Below, one piece after another: positions 6,804-64,000 of a stretch of DNA of 64,000 nt. The notes under the pieces are model-generated. The model was not told the DNA's origin, ran no database searches, and was given only the letters and a program-made list of their open reading frames with translations. The position numbers and the translations under genes are program-made. The stretch is taken from sequence record ON190025.1; one strand, 5' to 3'. Every line of letters begins with the position of its first letter. Position 1 is the stretch's first letter.

Positions 6804-7264
6804 AACTCGTACCGATGACGGTCGATTACAGTGAAGATATTTACACGATGTGTAAGTATCTTTTACTTAACGACACACACACAGAATGTCCAGAAACGAA
6901 GATCGGGCGCTTTATGCTCGGTCGTGCGACTGGTCATACAACTTCGATGGTAAAAGCCGCAGAGCGTCTACGACGCGAAGGTTTCAATGTGCTTGAAGTC
7001 TATTACAACGAATTAAATCGTTCGATGAATCGCCGTGGTTGTAATCATGACATGGCAACGACTTATGACAAGATCGTTCGTGATGGGGTTTATCACAACG
7101 CATTCGTAGGTCGTGGCAATGCAAATATGCCAGACATCATCTTGTTTGACACATATTCGTTTGCTGAACAACGCATTCGCGGTGTATCTACGAAAGTAGA
7201 TGAATTGATGCATATTTTGCATCGTGAGTTTAACAAGAAAACTGCGTTTTTCTTCATTCAATAG
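6800..7264 (+). CDS. hypothetical protein, degenerate P-loop-like
   Basis: GRATGHTT and PDIILFD resemble decayed Walker A and B motifs. Confidence 0.55.
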   Translation: MKLVPMTVDYSEDIYTMCKYLLLNDTHTECPETKIGRFMLGRATGHTTSMVKAAERLRREGFNVLEVYYNELNRSMNRRGCNHDMATTYDKIVRDGVYHNAFVGRGNANMPDIILFDTYSFAEQRIRGVSTKVDELMHILHREFNKKTAFFFIQ

Positions 7265-7564: not shown

Positions 7565-8230
7565 ATGAAACTATCTAAATCTACAATCGAAGTACTGAAA
7601 AACTTTGCAGGCATCAACAACGGCATGGTTATCCATCAAGGTTCTCGACTACGTACTCAAGACAACTTGAACAAGCAAATCGCTTACGCTGACATCGAAG
7701 ATTCGTTCCCTGTAGAGTTTGCAGTGTACGATCTGGGTGAGTTTCTAAGCGCGTTGAACTTGCTTGACAATGCTGAACTTGATTTCCAAGAAAAATACGT
7801 TGTCGTTACTGGTGATGGTGGTACGAAGCTTACGTTCCAATATGCAAACGCTGAGTTTGTAACTGAAGCACCTGAAAAAGTAAACTTCCCTACTGAACTA
7901 GACGGCGGTGCTGAGTTTGATCTCAAAGGTGAAGATCTACAGCGCGTTAAAAAAGCGTCTGCGACACTAGGTCTTTCTGACATTTGTGTTCGAACTGAAG
8001 CGGGTAGCACTGCAATCACGCTATCAGCTACTGATGCACAAGGTTCAAGCAAACACACGTTTGAAATCAACGTTGGTGAAGTTGAATCAGACGTTGAATT
8101 CAAGTTCTTCTTCAAAGCAGAGCGTTTGAACATCGTTGATCAAGACTACAAAGTTTCGATTCACCCAGCGGGTATTTCTCGCTTCTTGGGTCTATCCCTT
8201 GAGTACTTCATTGCAACCGAAGCACTTTAA
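7565..8230 (+). CDS. 45: sliding clamp gp45
   Basis: MKLSKSTIEVLKNFAGIN, FAVYDLGEFLSAL; synteny. Confidence 0.95.
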   Translation: MKLSKSTIEVLKNFAGINNGMVIHQGSRLRTQDNLNKQIAYADIEDSFPVEFAVYDLGEFLSALNLLDNAELDFQEKYVVVTGDGGTKLTFQYANAEFVTEAPEKVNFPTELDGGAEFDLKGEDLQRVKKASATLGLSDICVRTEAGSTAITLSATDAQGSSKHTFEINVGEVESDVEFKFFFKAERLNIVDQDYKVSIHPAGISRFLGLSLEYFIATEAL

Positions 8231-59382: not shown

Positions 59383-60408
59383 ATGTCACACGCAATCTTT
59401 ATCGGACGCTTTCGTCCATTCCACAACGGTCATCTATCTGCAATCACCCAAGCGTTCGAATCGCTTAATCTAGACAAGATGACTATCTTAATCGGTAGCT
59501 CTAATCGACATCGCTCAGTTAAAAACCCCTTCACGTTCGAAGAAGTACGTGATATGATGGGTATTGCTCTACCTGACGATATTCGAAGCAAAGTTCGCTT
59601 TGTACCACTAGGTGATTACGCGAAAGACGACGTTTGGCAGTCAAATGTTCGTTCTCATACAAAAGGTGCCACTCACATCGTTGGTTACGACAAAGACGAA
59701 AGCAGCTACTATCTCAAGCTATTCCCTGAGCTAAAACTATTTCAACCTGAACCAGTGAAGATGTATAACAGAGTTATCTCTGCAACTGACTTCAGAGAAC
59801 TGTACTTCAGCGAGATTCTACTGAACCACCCTGTTATGTCTGGTCTGATTCCCAAGCAAACAATGATGTTTCTTGACGATTGGAGCAAAACAGAGCATTT
59901 CACTGAAATGAAAGCTGAATACGATAGCTCAGTGCGCGAAATCGAGAAGTTTAAAGACTATCCCTACCAAGGTCACTTGAATATCGCGTGTGCTGACAGC
60001 GTTGTGATGTGTGCAGGTCATGTTCTTCTTGTCGAGCGTAAGTTCAACCCAGGCAAAGGCTGTTTAGCATTACCTGGCGGTCATAAGCACGAGAAAGAAA
60101 CATTCTTGTCTGCTGCGATTCGTGAACTGCAAGAAGAAACTAACATCAAAATCCCAGAGAAAGTCTTGCGTGGCTCTCTCAAAGGTGAGAAGATGTTCGA
60201 TAACCCTAATCGATCTTACCCTCACACTCGTATCACAATGGCATATCACTTCAAAGTGCAGCCAAACCCTGACAACACTTTCCCGAAAGTGAAACCAGCC
60301 GATGATGCTGTGTCTGCAAAATGGTATTCGTTGAGCGAAGTAATGGAAATGCAAGAACGTTTGTATGACGATCATTATCAAATCATTCAGTACTTCACTG
60401 GCATCTAA
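59383..60408 (+). CDS. natV: bifunctional NMN adenylyltransferase / Nudix ADP-ribose pyrophosphatase (NadM-Nudix, NatV-like)
   Basis: FIGRFRPFHNGH, KNPFT, ISATDFR, Nudix ALPGGH...E....AAIRELQEET, ADDA, DDH. Confidence 0.9.
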   Translation: MSHAIFIGRFRPFHNGHLSAITQAFESLNLDKMTILIGSSNRHRSVKNPFTFEEVRDMMGIALPDDIRSKVRFVPLGDYAKDDVWQSNVRSHTKGATHIVGYDKDESSYYLKLFPELKLFQPEPVKMYNRVISATDFRELYFSEILLNHPVMSGLIPKQTMMFLDDWSKTEHFTEMKAEYDSSVREIEKFKDYPYQGHLNIACADSVVMCAGHVLLVERKFNPGKGCLALPGGHKHEKETFLSAAIRELQEETNIKIPEKVLRGSLKGEKMFDNPNRSYPHTRITMAYHFKVQPNPDNTFPKVKPADDAVSAKWYSLSEVMEMQERLYDDHYQIIQYFTGI

Positions 60409-61874: not shown

Positions 61875-62086
61875 ACGTATCAAATGTAATGTCACAACAC
61901 GCTGAAATTCAAGATGCACTTATTGCCATGCTCGACGATGAGTTCAACGGCAAAGGTCATATCGAATATGCAGATTACTTCGATGACGAACAACTATGGG
62001 AAGTGCAATACTTCGATGGTGAAACAGTACAAGAAGTCATTGTAACTACAGTCGCGCTCGAAAAATGGATGCATAATAACAAATGA
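61871..62086 (+). CDS. acidic hypothetical protein
   Basis: ORF track. Confidence 0.6.
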   Translation: MNVSNVMSQHAEIQDALIAMLDDEFNGKGHIEYADYFDDEQLWEVQYFDGETVQEVIVTTVALEKWMHNNK

Positions 62087-62295
62087 TACATGACATTATC
62101 ATCGAACATCGTCGCATCATGAACATAGTCACTGAGTTATGCCAACTCAAATCATATGAATTCATTGATGACATCGAGTACGATGAAGACAAACAAATAT
62201 TCTATGTCACTATCGCTGAAGAAACTCAAAACGGCACTGAATACATAGAATGTAAAATCACTCTGCAACTAGTAGAAAACTACTATAAGGCTTGA
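62083..62295 (+). CDS. acidic hypothetical protein
   Basis: ORF track; similar character to 61871. Confidence 0.6.
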   Translation: MIHDIIIEHRRIMNIVTELCQLKSYEFIDDIEYDEDKQIFYVTIAEETQNGTEYIECKITLQLVENYYKA

Positions 62296-62470
62296 CAATG
62301 AAATTACCAGAATACTTACAACACATCAAAGTAAACGAAAACGTAATTACAGTAGACTCAGCACGCGATAAAGCATTAGTCATCGATTACCTACAATCAA
62401 TCAAAGCACGATTCCATACTGTACAAAAGACAGTTAGCCGCTGCGAAATTCACGTCAAGAGAGCTTAATC

Positions 62471-62830
62471 ATGAAAGAACTACTTAAAACAATGAAAGAA
62501 ACTGAAGAAGCCATCGCAGCGAAGTTTGGTCTAGACCATCTATGGCACGGACTAGTAGACTGCACCGATGTGCTATTCACTTGCGATCTAGTAACTGACG
62601 ACGTGAAAGATATGCATACCGTCATTAATCAAATACGTGAGTTCCAATACGGCTTTGAAGACGCTAATGCATTAGAAGAAGGCGATTGCTATGCAGTAGA
62701 AGTTTACGGCACAAGCGTGTGGCTATCAACTGATAACAAATACATGTTGACTACTGCCGATGACGGAAGTGGCAATAGAGACTTCTATATCTTCGATATG
62801 AATAATCTCAGATCATATGAATTATACTAA
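62471..62830 (+). CDS. acidic hypothetical protein
   Basis: GAG SD; VEVYGTSVW. Confidence 0.65.
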   Translation: MKELLKTMKETEEAIAAKFGLDHLWHGLVDCTDVLFTCDLVTDDVKDMHTVINQIREFQYGFEDANALEEGDCYAVEVYGTSVWLSTDNKYMLTTADDGSGNRDFYIFDMNNLRSYELY

Positions 62831-62832
62831 AG

Positions 62833-62869
62833 AAAAGGGTTGACAGTTGTCAGCCCTTTCGCGTATCAT
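62833..62869 (+). promoter_or_regulatory. combined terminator and early promoter
   Basis: AAAGGGTTGAC-AGTT-GTCAGCCCTTT; TTGACA -18- TATCAT. Confidence 0.7.
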
Positions 62870-62899
62870 ACACATATCAAATCAAGAAAGGAAAACATT

Positions 62900-63073
62900 A
62901 TGATTGGACTATCTATTATCATCGCAGTATTCAGCGTCGTGCTAATGATAGACTCACACGAGCAAATCATGTCTAAAGAATACAGAAACTTTGTCTTGAT
63001 ATTCAATGCCATTTGCTGTATAGTCAATGTAGCTAACATGATTGTGATTCACAAATACGGAGTAACACTATGA
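62900..63073 (+). CDS. small two-TM membrane protein
   Basis: Start at 62900 after AAGGA; MIGLSIIIAVFSVVLMI. Confidence 0.6.
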   Translation: MIGLSIIIAVFSVVLMIDSHEQIMSKEYRNFVLIFNAICCIVNVANMIVIHKYGVTL

Positions 63074-63234
63074 GCTTGACAATACTACTAATGACACTTC
63101 TATGCTGTGCAATACTCACTGGCATGAGTATCTTCAGCTTTATAAGCAAACCTAGCTTCGTGAAACTAGTAATCACTGCTGTTCTAGGCTTTGTCTCATA
63201 TGTTCTACTACACGTAACGGCAGGCGCAATATGA
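63070..63234 (+). CDS. 54-aa two-TM membrane protein (not in the ORF track)
   Basis: Translated by hand: MSLTILLMTLLCCAILTGMSIFSFISKPSFVKLVITAVLGFVSYVLL...; ATGA coupling on both sides. Confidence 0.6.
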   Translation: MSLTILLMTLLCCAILTGMSIFSFISKPSFVKLVITAVLGFVSYVLLHVTAGAI

Positions 63235-63446
63235 ATCAAACTATCAAAGCAATATGCATCGACAATACTTCAACTCGTATCGATAAACCCGAACCACCAA
63301 GCGGCATTACTCTCGGCAAAGAATATGTTGTTCACATGTATAACGTAAACGAACATACAAACAAACCACCTATGATTCGTATTACTAATGACAACAACCA
63401 ACGAGCAAGCTATGTCGCTGCACGATTTAATCTAACAGTAGGATAA
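63231..63446 (+). CDS. DUF6501/SH3-like small protein
   Basis: AICID....ITLGKEY.V...IRITNDN...Y..ARF. Confidence 0.6.
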   Translation: MNQTIKAICIDNTSTRIDKPEPPSGITLGKEYVVHMYNVNEHTNKPPMIRITNDNNQRASYVAARFNLTVG

Positions 63447-63450
63447 ACTC

Positions 63451-63618
63451 ATGTTCGCACTATCAATCTTAATTCTGATTCTCACTACATATCTGTTTGT
63501 AACCGATAAATCAAAACGAACAGTTCCATTCGTGGCTCTGCTAATAACAACTGCGTTTAACTGTATCATTCAGTATTACCTAATTGATATTCTATCATTG
63601 AGCTTTAAACTATCGTAA
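63451..63618 (+). CDS. 55-aa membrane protein (not in the ORF track)
   Basis: Translated by hand: MFALSILILILTTYLFV... Confidence 0.55.
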   Translation: MFALSILILILTTYLFVTDKSKRTVPFVALLITTAFNCIIQYYLIDILSLSFKLS

Positions 63619-63734
63619 TGCAAACACTAATCAATCTACTAAACGATATACCTATCGGCTACATTATGCTTGTTCTATGTGCTCTAGCAGCTATAGCCGG
63701 TTGGTGCTTGAGCGATATATCAAACGATGACTAA
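63618..63734 (+). CDS. 38-aa membrane peptide (not in the ORF track)
   Basis: MQTLINLLNDIPIGYIMLVLCALAAIAGWCLSDISNDD; TAATG coupling. Confidence 0.5.
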   Translation: MQTLINLLNDIPIGYIMLVLCALAAIAGWCLSDISNDD

Positions 63735-63825
63735 AAACGCTTAGAATCGCTCTCACAGCGTCTCAGAGCATGGTACAGATACAAAGCTTTTTAATATATC
63801 GCACCATGCCTCGTTTAAATGCACA

Positions 63826-63934
63826 TGTGTATAAATCTGTGGATAATATGTGTATGAGATTGTGCATAAGTGTCTGAAATCTGTGTATAAAAACATGATT
63901 TAGCTGTGCATAAGTCTGTGGATAATGTGGATAA
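63826..63934 (-). repeat. co-oriented DnaA-box array (TTATNCACA on -)
   Basis: TGTGNATAA at 63826, 63838, 63861, 63882, 63905, 63917 and 63926, plus a 1-mismatch box at 63849. Confidence 0.8.
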
Positions 63935-64000
63935 CTTTTTAGTGAAAAATTGGTGAAAGTCTCATCGGCTCCTGTGTGGTACGCGGCAGTCTAAAACCTT

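What the first reader, a model, noticed from the sequence alone, without database searches (positions are those of the whole stretch)
63826..63934. Dense DnaA-box array in a T4-like phage: host-initiator sink or DnaA-assisted origin?
Seen: within 109 bp of non-coding DNA there are seven perfect TGTGNATAA 9-mers (TGTGTATAA at 63826 and 63882; TGTGGATAA at 63838, 63917 and 63926; TGTGCATAA at 63861 and 63905) and one near match (TGTGTATGA at 63849). All have the same orientation, with start-to-start spacings of 12, 11, 12, 21, 23, 12 and 9 bp, mostly about one or two helical turns. Established: the reverse complement is the bacterial DnaA box TT(A/T)TNCACA, and TTATCCACA is the high-affinity R1/R4 type. 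T4-type phages start replication from R-loops and recombination with their own primase-helicase, without host DnaA. Inference: the array could be a datA-like titration site that soaks up host DnaA as phage genomes multiply, blocking host re-initiation without any protein product. Alternatively it is a DnaA-assisted origin or a decoy. The array abuts the window edge, so the downstream context is unseen.
Basis: partly seen in the sequence, partly recalled or inferred. Interest (0 to 1): 0.85.

Follow-up and report, generated by a model that had tools for sequence, protein, structure and literature searches.

The report
DnaA-box array at a phage origin-like site
A T4-type Vibrio phage carries a conserved row of eight binding sites for the host replication initiator DnaA, placed at the sharpest strand-composition switch in its genome, which suggests that a virulent phage with its own replication machinery still uses the host initiator at an early replication origin.

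Summary
Window 63826-63934 holds seven perfect TGTGNATAA 9-mers and one near match, all on the + strand. It is the only such cluster in the 247-kb genome of Vibrio phage PVA23.

The array is under selection as DnaA boxes. Across eight phages of two genera, fixed box positions vary at 5 of 64 columns, spacers at 20 of 37, and the "N" position drifts like spacer. The same box-GTC-box dimer is common in bacteria and is strongly enriched next to dnaA. No phage-encoded DnaA-like domain was found.

The new finding is that the array sits at the genome's strongest strand-composition switch. Third-codon GC skew goes from -0.45 to +0.35 and AT skew flips the other way, inside a ~160-kb block of genes all transcribed the same way. 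The switch persists in distant relatives with diverged flanking genes.

The locus has unique conserved flank blocks and a strong early promoter 108 bp downstream. KVP40 has lost the boxes. D482 carries a different 10-bp iteron array at the same locus.

Best reading: a host-DnaA loading module that assists a T4-type early origin. A pure datA-like sink is less supported but not excluded. Similar phased DnaA-box arrays are widespread in other phages (T5, T7-like), so this is a new variant of a known but unexplained kind.

The parts
63826..63934 (+). Array of eight co-oriented DnaA boxes, read as TGTGNATAA on the + strand (TTATNCACA on the - strand). Boxes start at 63826, 63838, 63849 (imperfect, TGTGTATGA), 63861, 63882, 63905, 63917 and 63926. 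They are grouped 4 + 1 + 3, with 0-3 bp gaps inside groups and 12-14 bp gaps between groups.
   Evidence: unique cluster; the same eight positions are conserved in 8 phages of 2 genera; fixed positions vary at 5/64 columns against 20/37 for spacers, p = 4e-7; the N position varies at 4/8. Box 3 is imperfect in every phage, so it looks like a conserved weak site.
63735..63825 (.). Conserved left flank block. It includes the AT-only patch TTTTTAATATAT (63788-63799) and the near-invariant TATCGCACCATGCCTCGTT (63797-63815).
   Evidence: Conserved in all 13 aligned phages, including the box-free KVP40 and D482. Single copy in the genome. It holds the least stable 25-mer of the gap, but only at z = 2.3. 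The apparent hairpin arms do not covary.
63935..64000 (.). Start of the conserved right flank block (includes CTCATCGGCTCCTGTGT at 63961-63977). It continues past the record junction to a strong early promoter, TTGACA-18-TGnGAGAAT, at PVA23 positions 42-71. That is 108 bp after the last box and outside the window.
   Evidence: The promoter and the upstream TGAAAATCTAAT.CGCTTCGCATCTT block are conserved in KVP40, VS1, ValKK3 and VH7D.
62001..63734 (+). Left arm of the strand-composition switch. These are small + strand ORFs whose third codon positions are C- and A-rich (GC3 skew -0.45, AT3 skew +0.19), the most extreme of 32 two-kb bins in the window.
   Evidence: The right arm (PVA23 positions ~105-2550, outside the window) has GC3 +0.34 to +0.42 and AT3 about -0.28.

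Best explanation
The array is a cooperative loading platform for the host initiator DnaA. It is built into a conserved, single-copy non-coding locus that acts as an early replication initiation zone of these T4-type vibriophages.

Shown:
- The eight 9-mers are selected as TGTGNATAA, mostly with one-helical-turn phasing.
- They sit exactly where synonymous-site composition switches from C/A-rich to G/T-rich on the + strand. That is the lagging-to-leading pattern of a bidirectional origin, and transcription direction does not change there.
- A strong sigma-70 early promoter fires rightwards 108 bp downstream, into DNA whose non-template strand is strongly G-rich.

Inferred:
- As at T4 oriA/oriE/oriF, an early transcript forms an R-loop that primes rightward synthesis.
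- A DnaA-ATP oligomer on the phased boxes helps open or hold open the adjacent AT-rich flank, and/or shields the initiation zone from read-through transcription coming from the upstream operon, so that the phage's own helicase loader, helicase and primase can assemble.
- The DnaA module is auxiliary and exchangeable, not essential. The KVP40 clade has let the boxes decay, and the D482 group carries a different 10-bp tandem iteron at the same locus, while both keep the flank blocks, the promoter and the composition switch.
For: Box identity and selection. The same box-GTC-box dimer occurs in at least 120 bacterial genomes, and 27 of 120 have dnaA within 4 kb. No DnaA domain IV homologue was found in Vibrio phages by tblastn.

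The 11-12 bp phasing is the dominant spacing of such arrays in 79 unrelated viral contig families: 175 and 135 cases against 16 at 9 bp and 2 at 10 bp.

Composition switch: whole-sequence GC skew goes from -0.024 to +0.225 across the junction. In VH7D the step peaks at 7800, with the array at 7827-7935, at 0.35 against sd 0.053 and a maximum of 0.145 elsewhere. At third codon positions GC3 goes from -0.44 to +0.36 and AT3 from +0.18 to -0.28. Genome-wide, dGC3 is +0.80 and dAT3 -0.42, against sd 0.115 and 0.090 and a next-largest step of +0.26. The flip is kept in F86 and D482 even though flanking proteins are only 27-66% identical and the gene order on the right differs.

T4 control: annotated oriA lies within ~750 bp of the joint-largest positive GC3 step in a 50-kb co-directional region.

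Locus features: early promoter and no terminator; unique conserved flanks; a different phased iteron array at the same locus in D482. Precedent: T4 oriE combines an early promoter with evenly spaced direct repeats (PMC3016281).
Against: No replication data exist, so the origin is inferred from composition alone.

The skew asymmetry decays within ~2.5-4 kb. A classical replichore-wide effect would extend further, so a long-lived bubble or R-loop with exposed single strands has to be assumed.

The right arm could be explained by very high transcription alone, although the left arm could not.

There is no strong unwinding element (best z = 2.3), no IHF consensus and no GATC.

The switch is also present in KVP40 and D482, which have no boxes, so the boxes are not required for whatever causes it.

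In T5, and probably in T7-like phages, comparable DnaA-box clusters do not lie at mapped origins.

The boxes lie upstream of the promoter, not in the transcribed R-loop region.
Confidence: 0.45

Rival explanations
1. DnaA sink or datA-like inactivator. The array has no role in phage replication. As phage genomes multiply it sequesters DnaA, or catalyses DnaA-ATP hydrolysis, and so blocks new rounds of host chromosome 1 initiation. Placing it at the earliest-replicated locus would maximise its copy number.
For: The boxes are high-affinity-type sites: TTATCCACA is the commonest variant, 37 of 64. Phased arrays occur in many virulent phages that bring their own replisomes, including T5 and T7-like phages where they are not at origins. 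The array is dispensable in the KVP40 clade.
Against: No IHF consensus is present, and IHF is needed for datA function in E. coli. The array adds only 7 perfect boxes to 18 scattered ones per genome, so clustering and phasing are not explained by titration alone. A conserved weak box and strict helical phasing point to a defined oligomer. Its exact coincidence with the composition switch and the promoter would be unexplained. Blocking new initiations brings little obvious gain within one lytic cycle (inference).
Confidence: 0.15
2. Transcriptional element. DnaA bound to the co-oriented boxes acts as a roadblock or insulator that ends the upstream early operon, which has no intrinsic terminator. 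Alternatively it couples the downstream early promoter to the host's DnaA-ATP (growth) state.
For: No terminator-like hairpin lies between two co-directional operons. All boxes share one orientation relative to transcription. The array is 108 bp upstream of a strong conserved promoter. DnaA/box complexes are known to block RNA polymerase and to regulate promoters, for example the asnC terminator, dnaA autoregulation and lambda pR (own knowledge; lambda is cited in PMC8477408).
Against: Eight phased boxes are far more than known DnaA roadblocks use. This idea does not explain the C/A-rich left arm of the composition switch. The KVP40 clade manages without the boxes while keeping the same operon layout.
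Confidence: 0.15
3. Iterons for a phage-encoded or other non-DnaA protein that happens to share the DnaA-box sequence. This would be a Rep-like initiator, as assumed for the T4 oriE iterons and as plausibly applies to the 10-bp repeats of D482.
For: D482 carries an unrelated 10-bp iteron array at the same locus. Many small genes of unknown function surround the site.
Against: The motif equals the DnaA consensus, including its degenerate fifth position. The same dimer marks bacterial dnaA/oriC regions across phyla. The same motif and phasing recur in 79 unrelated viral contig families, which argues for a universal host reader. No DnaA-domain-IV homologue turned up in Vibrio phages.
Confidence: 0.1
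4. Membrane tether or DNA-entry element, as proposed for the eight DnaA boxes of the T5 injection-stop region. Membrane-bound DnaA would capture the array.
For: Davison's T5 analysis (bioRxiv 10.1101/866236). A T7-like phage has a similar array near the genome end that enters first.
Against: T4-type genomes are packaged by the headful and are circularly permuted (own knowledge; stated for T4 in PMC3016281). The array therefore has no fixed position relative to the entering end. All boxes here are direct repeats, not the inverted-repeat pairs seen in T5.
Confidence: 0.05

Closest known systems
Bacterial oriC DnaA-box arrays (E. coli and Vibrio oriC1 type)
   Same: Same 9-mer consensus. Head-to-tail sites with 2-3 bp gaps, about one helical turn. 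A mix of strong and weak sites. Located at a GC-skew switch. The AT-rich patch lies on the side where the unwinding element lies relative to TGTGGATAA-oriented boxes in E. coli oriC (own knowledge for that orientation).
   Different: No 13-mer-type unwinding element, IHF site or GATC cluster. No opposed second half-array. The phage encodes its own helicase, loader and primase, so DnaB/DnaC loading is not obviously needed. The skew signal is local (a few kb).
T4 origins: R-loop origins oriA/oriF/oriG, and oriE with an early promoter plus 12-nt 'iterons'
   Same: T4-type phage. An origin built around a promoter whose transcript primes synthesis. oriE uses an early promoter and has evenly spaced direct repeats of unknown role (PMC3016281). 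T4 oriA shows a smaller GC3 step of the same sign.
   Different: The T4 oriE repeats lie inside gene 5 coding sequence (24-nt period) and have no DnaA-box content. No host DnaA involvement is known for T4. Here the repeats are upstream of the promoter and non-coding.
T5-like phage injection-stop (iss) region with eight DnaA boxes
   Same: Virulent phage with its own replication genes. About eight conserved DnaA or DnaA-like boxes. Pairs separated by 3 bp. A conserved non-coding region. Function unproven.
   Different: The T5 boxes sit in inverted-repeat pairs within the terminal repeat and away from mapped origins. Here all eight boxes are direct repeats, internal to a presumably permuted genome, and at an origin-like composition switch.
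E. coli datA / B. subtilis DnaA-box clusters (negative regulators of initiation)
   Same: A cluster of DnaA boxes outside the host oriC that could draw DnaA away from oriC.
   Different: No IHF site was found. The element is carried on an amplifying phage genome. It is tightly phased. It coincides with promoter and skew features that the chromosomal titration loci do not need.
DnaA boxes that assist R-loop or iteron origins of plasmids and phages (pBR322/ColE1, P1, F, pSC101, lambda pR activation)
   Same: Host DnaA acts as an auxiliary, partly dispensable factor at an origin whose main initiator is something else (own knowledge). This matches the loss of the boxes in KVP40 and their replacement by other iterons in D482.
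   Different: Those elements have one to five boxes and rely on the host replisome. Here there are eight phased boxes in a phage with a complete T4-type replisome.

Membership tests
DnaA-box cluster (host DnaA binding array) | 9-mers matching TT(A/T)TNCACA | tested here: met
   Seven perfect sites and one with a single mismatch in 109 bp. Unique in the genome.
DnaA-box cluster (host DnaA binding array) | Selection on the eight specified positions but not on the degenerate fifth position | tested here: met
   Variable columns: fixed 5/64, N 4/8, spacer 20/37. Mean pairwise difference 0.04, 0.25 and 0.29 respectively.
DnaA-box cluster (host DnaA binding array) | Same site-pair architecture as chromosomal DnaA-binding regions | tested here: met
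   The exact box-GTC-box dimer occurs in at least 120 bacterial genomes, and 27/120 have dnaA within 4 kb.
DnaA-box cluster (host DnaA binding array) | Physical binding by host DnaA | not testable with these tools
   Needs EMSA, footprinting or ChIP with Vibrio DnaA.
Bacterial oriC-type origin | AT-rich DNA unwinding element next to the boxes | tested here: inconclusive
   Only a 12-bp AT-only patch (63788-63799). The least stable 25-mer has z = 2.3, which is not unusual for this locus.
Bacterial oriC-type origin | IHF/Fis sites and a GATC cluster | tested here: not met
   No WATCAANNNNTTR match (strict or relaxed) and no GATC in the gap.
Bacterial oriC-type origin | Strand-composition (GC skew) switch from negative to positive at the site | tested here: met
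   dGC3 +0.80 and dAT3 -0.42, the largest in the genome, with no change in transcription direction. The effect is local, a few kb.
datA-type DnaA inactivation/titration locus | Box cluster plus an essential IHF site; lowers host initiation | tested here: not met
   The cluster is present but there is no IHF consensus. The effect on the host is not testable here.
T4-type R-loop origin | A promoter whose transcript enters an R-loop-prone or unwinding region | tested here: inconclusive
   There is a strong early promoter, TTGACA-18-TGnGAGAAT, and the downstream non-template strand is strongly G-rich (skew +0.31 in the first kb). It is a sigma-70 early promoter, not a MotA middle promoter. R-loop formation was not tested.
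T4-type R-loop origin | Mapped start of early DNA synthesis | not testable with these tools
   No replication data are available for any Schizotequatrovirus. No paper holds both 'DnaA box' and KVP40.
T4 oriE iterons | Sequence or positional homology to the T4 oriE repeats | tested here: not met
   The T4 repeats are a 24-nt period inside gene 5, with no DnaA-box enrichment. The locus is not syntenic.
T5 iss-type DnaA-box cluster | Box pairs placed in inverted repeats within a terminal repeat | tested here: not met
   All eight boxes are direct repeats. The locus is internal, in the middle of the record in VH7D, KVP40 and others.
Rep/iteron origin with a phage-encoded initiator | A phage protein with matching DNA specificity | tested here: inconclusive
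   tblastn with DnaA domain IV found no Vibrio phage among 103 records. A non-homologous binder cannot be excluded.

The most novel reading that the evidence does not exclude
T4-type vibriophages have a modular early origin. The core is a conserved set of flank blocks, an early promoter and a G-skewed R-loop zone. Its initiator-binding cassette is exchangeable: host-DnaA boxes in the PVA23, VH7D, VS1 and nt-1 lineages, an unrelated 10-bp iteron in the D482 group, and none in KVP40. In the DnaA-box lineages, a virulent phage with a complete replisome recruits the host initiator to open its own origin. As a side effect it draws DnaA away from the host chromosome at the most amplified phage locus.
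Probability: 0.3. Interest if true: 0.78.

Novelty: new variant of a known kind. Interest (0 to 1): 0.62.

Why it matters
How T4-type phages outside the T-even group start replication is unknown, and host DnaA has never been implicated for this family. This locus gives a precise, testable candidate origin in cultivable phages. Natural variants provide ready-made controls: eight boxes, decayed boxes, or a different iteron.

It also connects to a wider and largely unexplained pattern. Helically phased DnaA-box arrays recur in many virulent phages, including T5, T7-like phages and dozens of uncultured lineages. An answer here would show what lytic phages gain by binding the host initiator: help with origin opening, shutdown of host replication, or sensing of the host's growth state.

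The codon-position skew method used here may also help locate origins in other phages whose genes all run in one direction.

Tried and rejected
1. Structured RNA. Rfam found nothing relevant. RNAalifold gave a consensus energy of -0.31 kcal/mol, and the single-sequence z-score was -1.1. The apparent hairpin in the left block does not covary. Rejected.

2. Homology to the T4 oriE iterons. Those are coding repeats in gene 5 with no box content. Rejected.

3. A phage-encoded DnaA-like binder. tblastn with E. coli DnaA domain IV found pelagiphage, Polaribacter, Cellulophaga and other phages, but no Vibrio phage. Not supported.

4. Capture of host oriC. The specific dimer is generic across bacterial phyla rather than Vibrio-specific. 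No evidence of capture.

5. datA and oriC hallmarks (IHF, GATC, strong unwinding element). Absent or weak.

6. General test of whether arrays in unrelated viral contigs sit at skew steps. This was confounded by divergent transcription, because GC and AT skew mostly move together there. Inconclusive.

7. Flank blocks as a repeated regulatory element. Both are single copy.

8. Chance clustering. Excluded.

9. The KVP40 genome paper could not be read, because it is not held. One literature query failed on term length.

10. Boxes versus spacers in KVP40. Boxes are 50% identical to PVA23 and spacers 62%. The difference is small and was not tested, so it is treated as neutral decay rather than directed removal.

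Full report
IDENTITY AND OBSERVATION. The window is the last 64 kb of the circular record of Vibrio phage PVA23 (ON190025.1, 246,962 bp; genus Schizotequatrovirus, the KVP40-like T4-type phages). The window end is the record's linearisation point. The reported sites are all there: seven perfect TGTGNATAA 9-mers and one single-mismatch copy between 63826 and 63934, all on the + strand, spaced 12, 11, 12, 21, 23, 12 and 9 bp. The window holds 16 matches against 4.3 expected. The other 183 kb of the genome holds 9 against about 11 expected. Over the whole genome there are 25 perfect sites, and no other 150-bp stretch holds more than one. The Poisson chance of seven in 109 bp is about 4e-19.

CONTEXT. 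The array lies in a ~390-bp non-coding gap between a small ORF ending at 63734 and a small membrane-protein gene that starts about 105 bp into the record. All neighbouring genes are on the + strand. The site is in the middle of a ~160-kb block of + strand early and middle genes. A strong sigma-70 promoter with an extended -10 (TTGACA-18-TGnGAGAAT) starts 108 bp after the last box. No intrinsic terminator is detectable in the gap.

CONSERVATION. Homologous gaps were taken from 13 phages and aligned. The eight boxes occupy the same positions in PVA23, VH7D, ValKK3, VS1, VS2 and QD01 (Schizotequatrovirus) and in CZ01 and nt-1 (Mylasvirus). phi-ST2 carries the same seven perfect boxes, and phi-Grn1, XZ1, R10Z, R11Z and Va3 match the whole gap at 95-99% identity by BLAST. 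F86 has a partial array. Among the eight array-bearing phages in the alignment, the 64 fixed box positions vary at 5 columns, the 37 spacer positions at 20 (Fisher p = 4e-7), and the eight fifth-position 'N' columns at 4. Mean pairwise differences are 0.04, 0.29 and 0.25. So selection acts on exactly the positions that define the DnaA box and ignores the one the consensus leaves free. Box 3 is imperfect in every phage, though at different positions, which suggests a maintained weak site. TTATCCACA is the commonest variant.

KVP40, phi-pp2 and PVA8 in the alignment, and V07, V09, PG216, VH1_2019 and TCU-VP03 by BLAST, keep both flanks but have a degenerate middle segment with no boxes. The D482 group also lacks boxes. 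Instead it carries about ten tandem copies of a 10-bp unit, AGCCAAGAAC, just beyond the right flank block of the same locus. The two flank blocks are single copy in the genome and conserved in all 13 phages.

WHO READS THE BOXES. tblastn with E. coli DnaA domain IV finds DnaA-like genes in pelagiphages, Polaribacter, Cellulophaga and other phages, but in no Vibrio phage. The exact dimer TGTGNATAA-GTC-TGTGGATNA occurs in at least 120 bacterial genomes from many phyla. In 27 of the 120, a dnaA homologue lies within 4 kb, and those loci carry a median of 9 boxes. Chance expectation is well under 1%. Host DnaA is therefore the economical reader. Binding itself cannot be tested here.

THE NEW FINDING: A STRAND-COMPOSITION SWITCH. 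GC skew in 4-kb windows falls to -0.024 just left of the array and jumps to +0.225 just right of it. These are the lowest and highest values in about 90 kb. In VH7D, where the region is contiguous, the step with 2-kb arms peaks at position 7800 (array at 7827-7935) at 0.35, against sd 0.053 and a maximum of 0.145 anywhere in the 64-kb window.

The effect sits at third codon positions. In VH7D, GC3 skew is -0.44 in the 2 kb to the left and +0.36 in the 2.5 kb to the right, with AT3 skew +0.18 and -0.28. Both sides return to about -0.1 further out. The corresponding PVA23 bin, 62001-64000, has GC3 -0.45 and AT3 +0.19. Across the whole PVA23 genome, the step at the array is dGC3 +0.80 and dAT3 -0.42, against sd 0.115 and 0.090 and a next-largest positive step of +0.26 in co-directional regions.

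C/A excess to the left and G/T excess to the right on one physical strand is the classical lagging-to-leading pattern of a bidirectional origin. Because transcription direction does not change here, that usual confounder is absent. The flip is also present in F86 (-0.43 to +0.23) and D482 (-0.28 to +0.27). Their flanking proteins are only 27-66% identical to VH7D's, and the gene order on the right differs. At that divergence synonymous sites are saturated, so the asymmetry must be maintained by a process tied to the position. KVP40 shows it too, but its genes are close homologues, so that is weak evidence.

As a control, T4's annotated oriA lies within ~750 bp of the joint-largest positive GC3 step (+0.21, z about 2.5) in a 50-kb co-directional region. 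The sign is the same but the size is much smaller.

WHAT IT IS NOT. It is not a structured RNA. It is not related to the T4 oriE 'iterons', which are a 24-nt coding repeat in gene 5 with no DnaA-box content. It is not a full oriC or datA copy: there is no IHF consensus, no GATC, and only a modest AT-rich patch at 63788-63799.

WIDER PATTERN AND PRECEDENT. These fall into 79 sequence families, none related to PVA23, with up to ten perfect boxes per 200 bp. They are mostly intergenic, and same-strand spacings are dominated by 11 bp (175 cases) and 12 bp (135), against 16 at 9 bp and 2 at 10 bp. Flanking genes include a VapE-like primase/helicase-type protein and an AT-hook protein.

Array-only BLAST matches led to cultured virulent phages: T7-like P483, A7 and nasanit, Lactococcus AM4 and AM5, and microviruses. 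In P483, about eight co-oriented boxes lie between the genome end and the early promoters. Davison has described eight conserved DnaA boxes, paired with 3-bp gaps, in the injection-stop region of T5-like phages. He argued they are not replication-related, and their role is hypothetical (bioRxiv 10.1101/866236). No paper in the library links DnaA boxes with KVP40-type phages. The T4 replication review does not mention DnaA, but it notes that oriE pairs an early promoter with evenly spaced repeats of unknown role (PMC3016281).

INTERPRETATION. Three things are shown:
- A selected, phased DnaA-box array exists.
- It sits in a unique conserved non-coding locus with a strong early promoter.
- That locus carries the genome's sharpest origin-like composition switch.

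The rest is inferred. I read the locus as an early initiation zone of the T4 R-loop type, with the DnaA array as an auxiliary, exchangeable module that helps open or insulate it. The auxiliary status follows from its loss in KVP40 and its replacement by another iteron in D482 while the core features persist.

The short range of the asymmetry (a few kb) fits long-lived exposure of opposite single strands in an initiation bubble or R-loop better than replichore-wide fork polarity. This step is speculative.

Three other readings remain possible, and they are not mutually exclusive with an origin location: the datA-like sink, a transcriptional roadblock or regulator, and a non-DnaA binder. A sink placed at the first-amplified locus would be especially effective.

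NOVELTY AND SCORE. DnaA boxes in phage DNA are not new (lambda, P1, T5, and origins predicted in other phages), and phased arrays prove to be widespread. What is new is such an array in a T4-type phage, its exact coincidence with an origin-like composition switch, and the natural series of cassette variants. I classify it as a new variant of a known kind, with interest 0.62.

Noticed in passing
IMG/VR loci L019-L138 (e.g. L065 1599-1770, L062 12733-12881, L087 7202-7303, L073 254-378): Helically phased, mostly co-oriented DnaA-box arrays (up to 10 perfect boxes per 200 bp, spacing 11-12 bp) occur in at least 79 unrelated viral contig families. One large family places them upstream of a small AT-hook protein gene, and another next to a VapE-like primase/helicase-type gene.
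   Followed up: partly
L142 (Escherichia phage P483, Berlinvirus) 2503-2628: A T7-like virulent phage has about eight co-oriented DnaA-type boxes (TGTGGATAAC units, 11-12 bp phasing) between the genome end and the early sigma-70 promoters. Similar matches occur in Shigella phage A7 (positions 79-149), phage nasanit, Lactococcus phages AM4 and AM5, and some Microviridae.
   Followed up: partly
L144 (Vibrio phage D482) 7224-7323, plus TGAGAGAAT at 7044-7052 and 7062-7070: At the locus homologous to the array, D482 has about ten tandem copies of a 10-bp unit (AGCCAAGAAC) and duplicated promoter -10-like TGAGAGAAT elements instead of DnaA boxes. Some of this stretch is annotated as tiny ORFs, which may be spurious.
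   Followed up: partly
window 62900-63734: A run of very small + strand ORFs encoding hydrophobic peptides (62900-63073, 63070-63234, 63451-63618, 63618-63734). Several are not annotated in VH7D. Their third codon positions are unusually C- and A-rich.
   Followed up: partly
window 63751-63769: A 10-bp unit (TCTCACAGCG / TCTCAGAGC) occurs twice in tandem in the left flank. D482 has CAGAAGCTCT twice at the equivalent place. Function unknown.
   Followed up: no
window 59383-60408: An intact 341-aa NMN adenylyltransferase / Nudix hydrolase fusion (natV-type). It belongs to the NAD salvage gene set seen elsewhere in the genome (NadR, nicotinamide riboside transporter, nicotinamide phosphoribosyltransferase in PVA23 positions 20-40 kb).
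   Followed up: no
PVA23 genome position ~2788 (outside the window, L003): The largest negative GC3 step in the genome (-0.43) lies about 2.8 kb right of the array and marks the sharp end of the G/T-rich right arm. Why the asymmetry ends so abruptly is unexplained.
   Followed up: no
L140 (T4) 2427-2558: The T4 oriE 'iterons' coincide with the 24/48-nt periodic repeat that lies within gene 5 (locus 960-2687), so their periodicity may reflect the repetitive protein sequence rather than initiator binding.
   Followed up: partly
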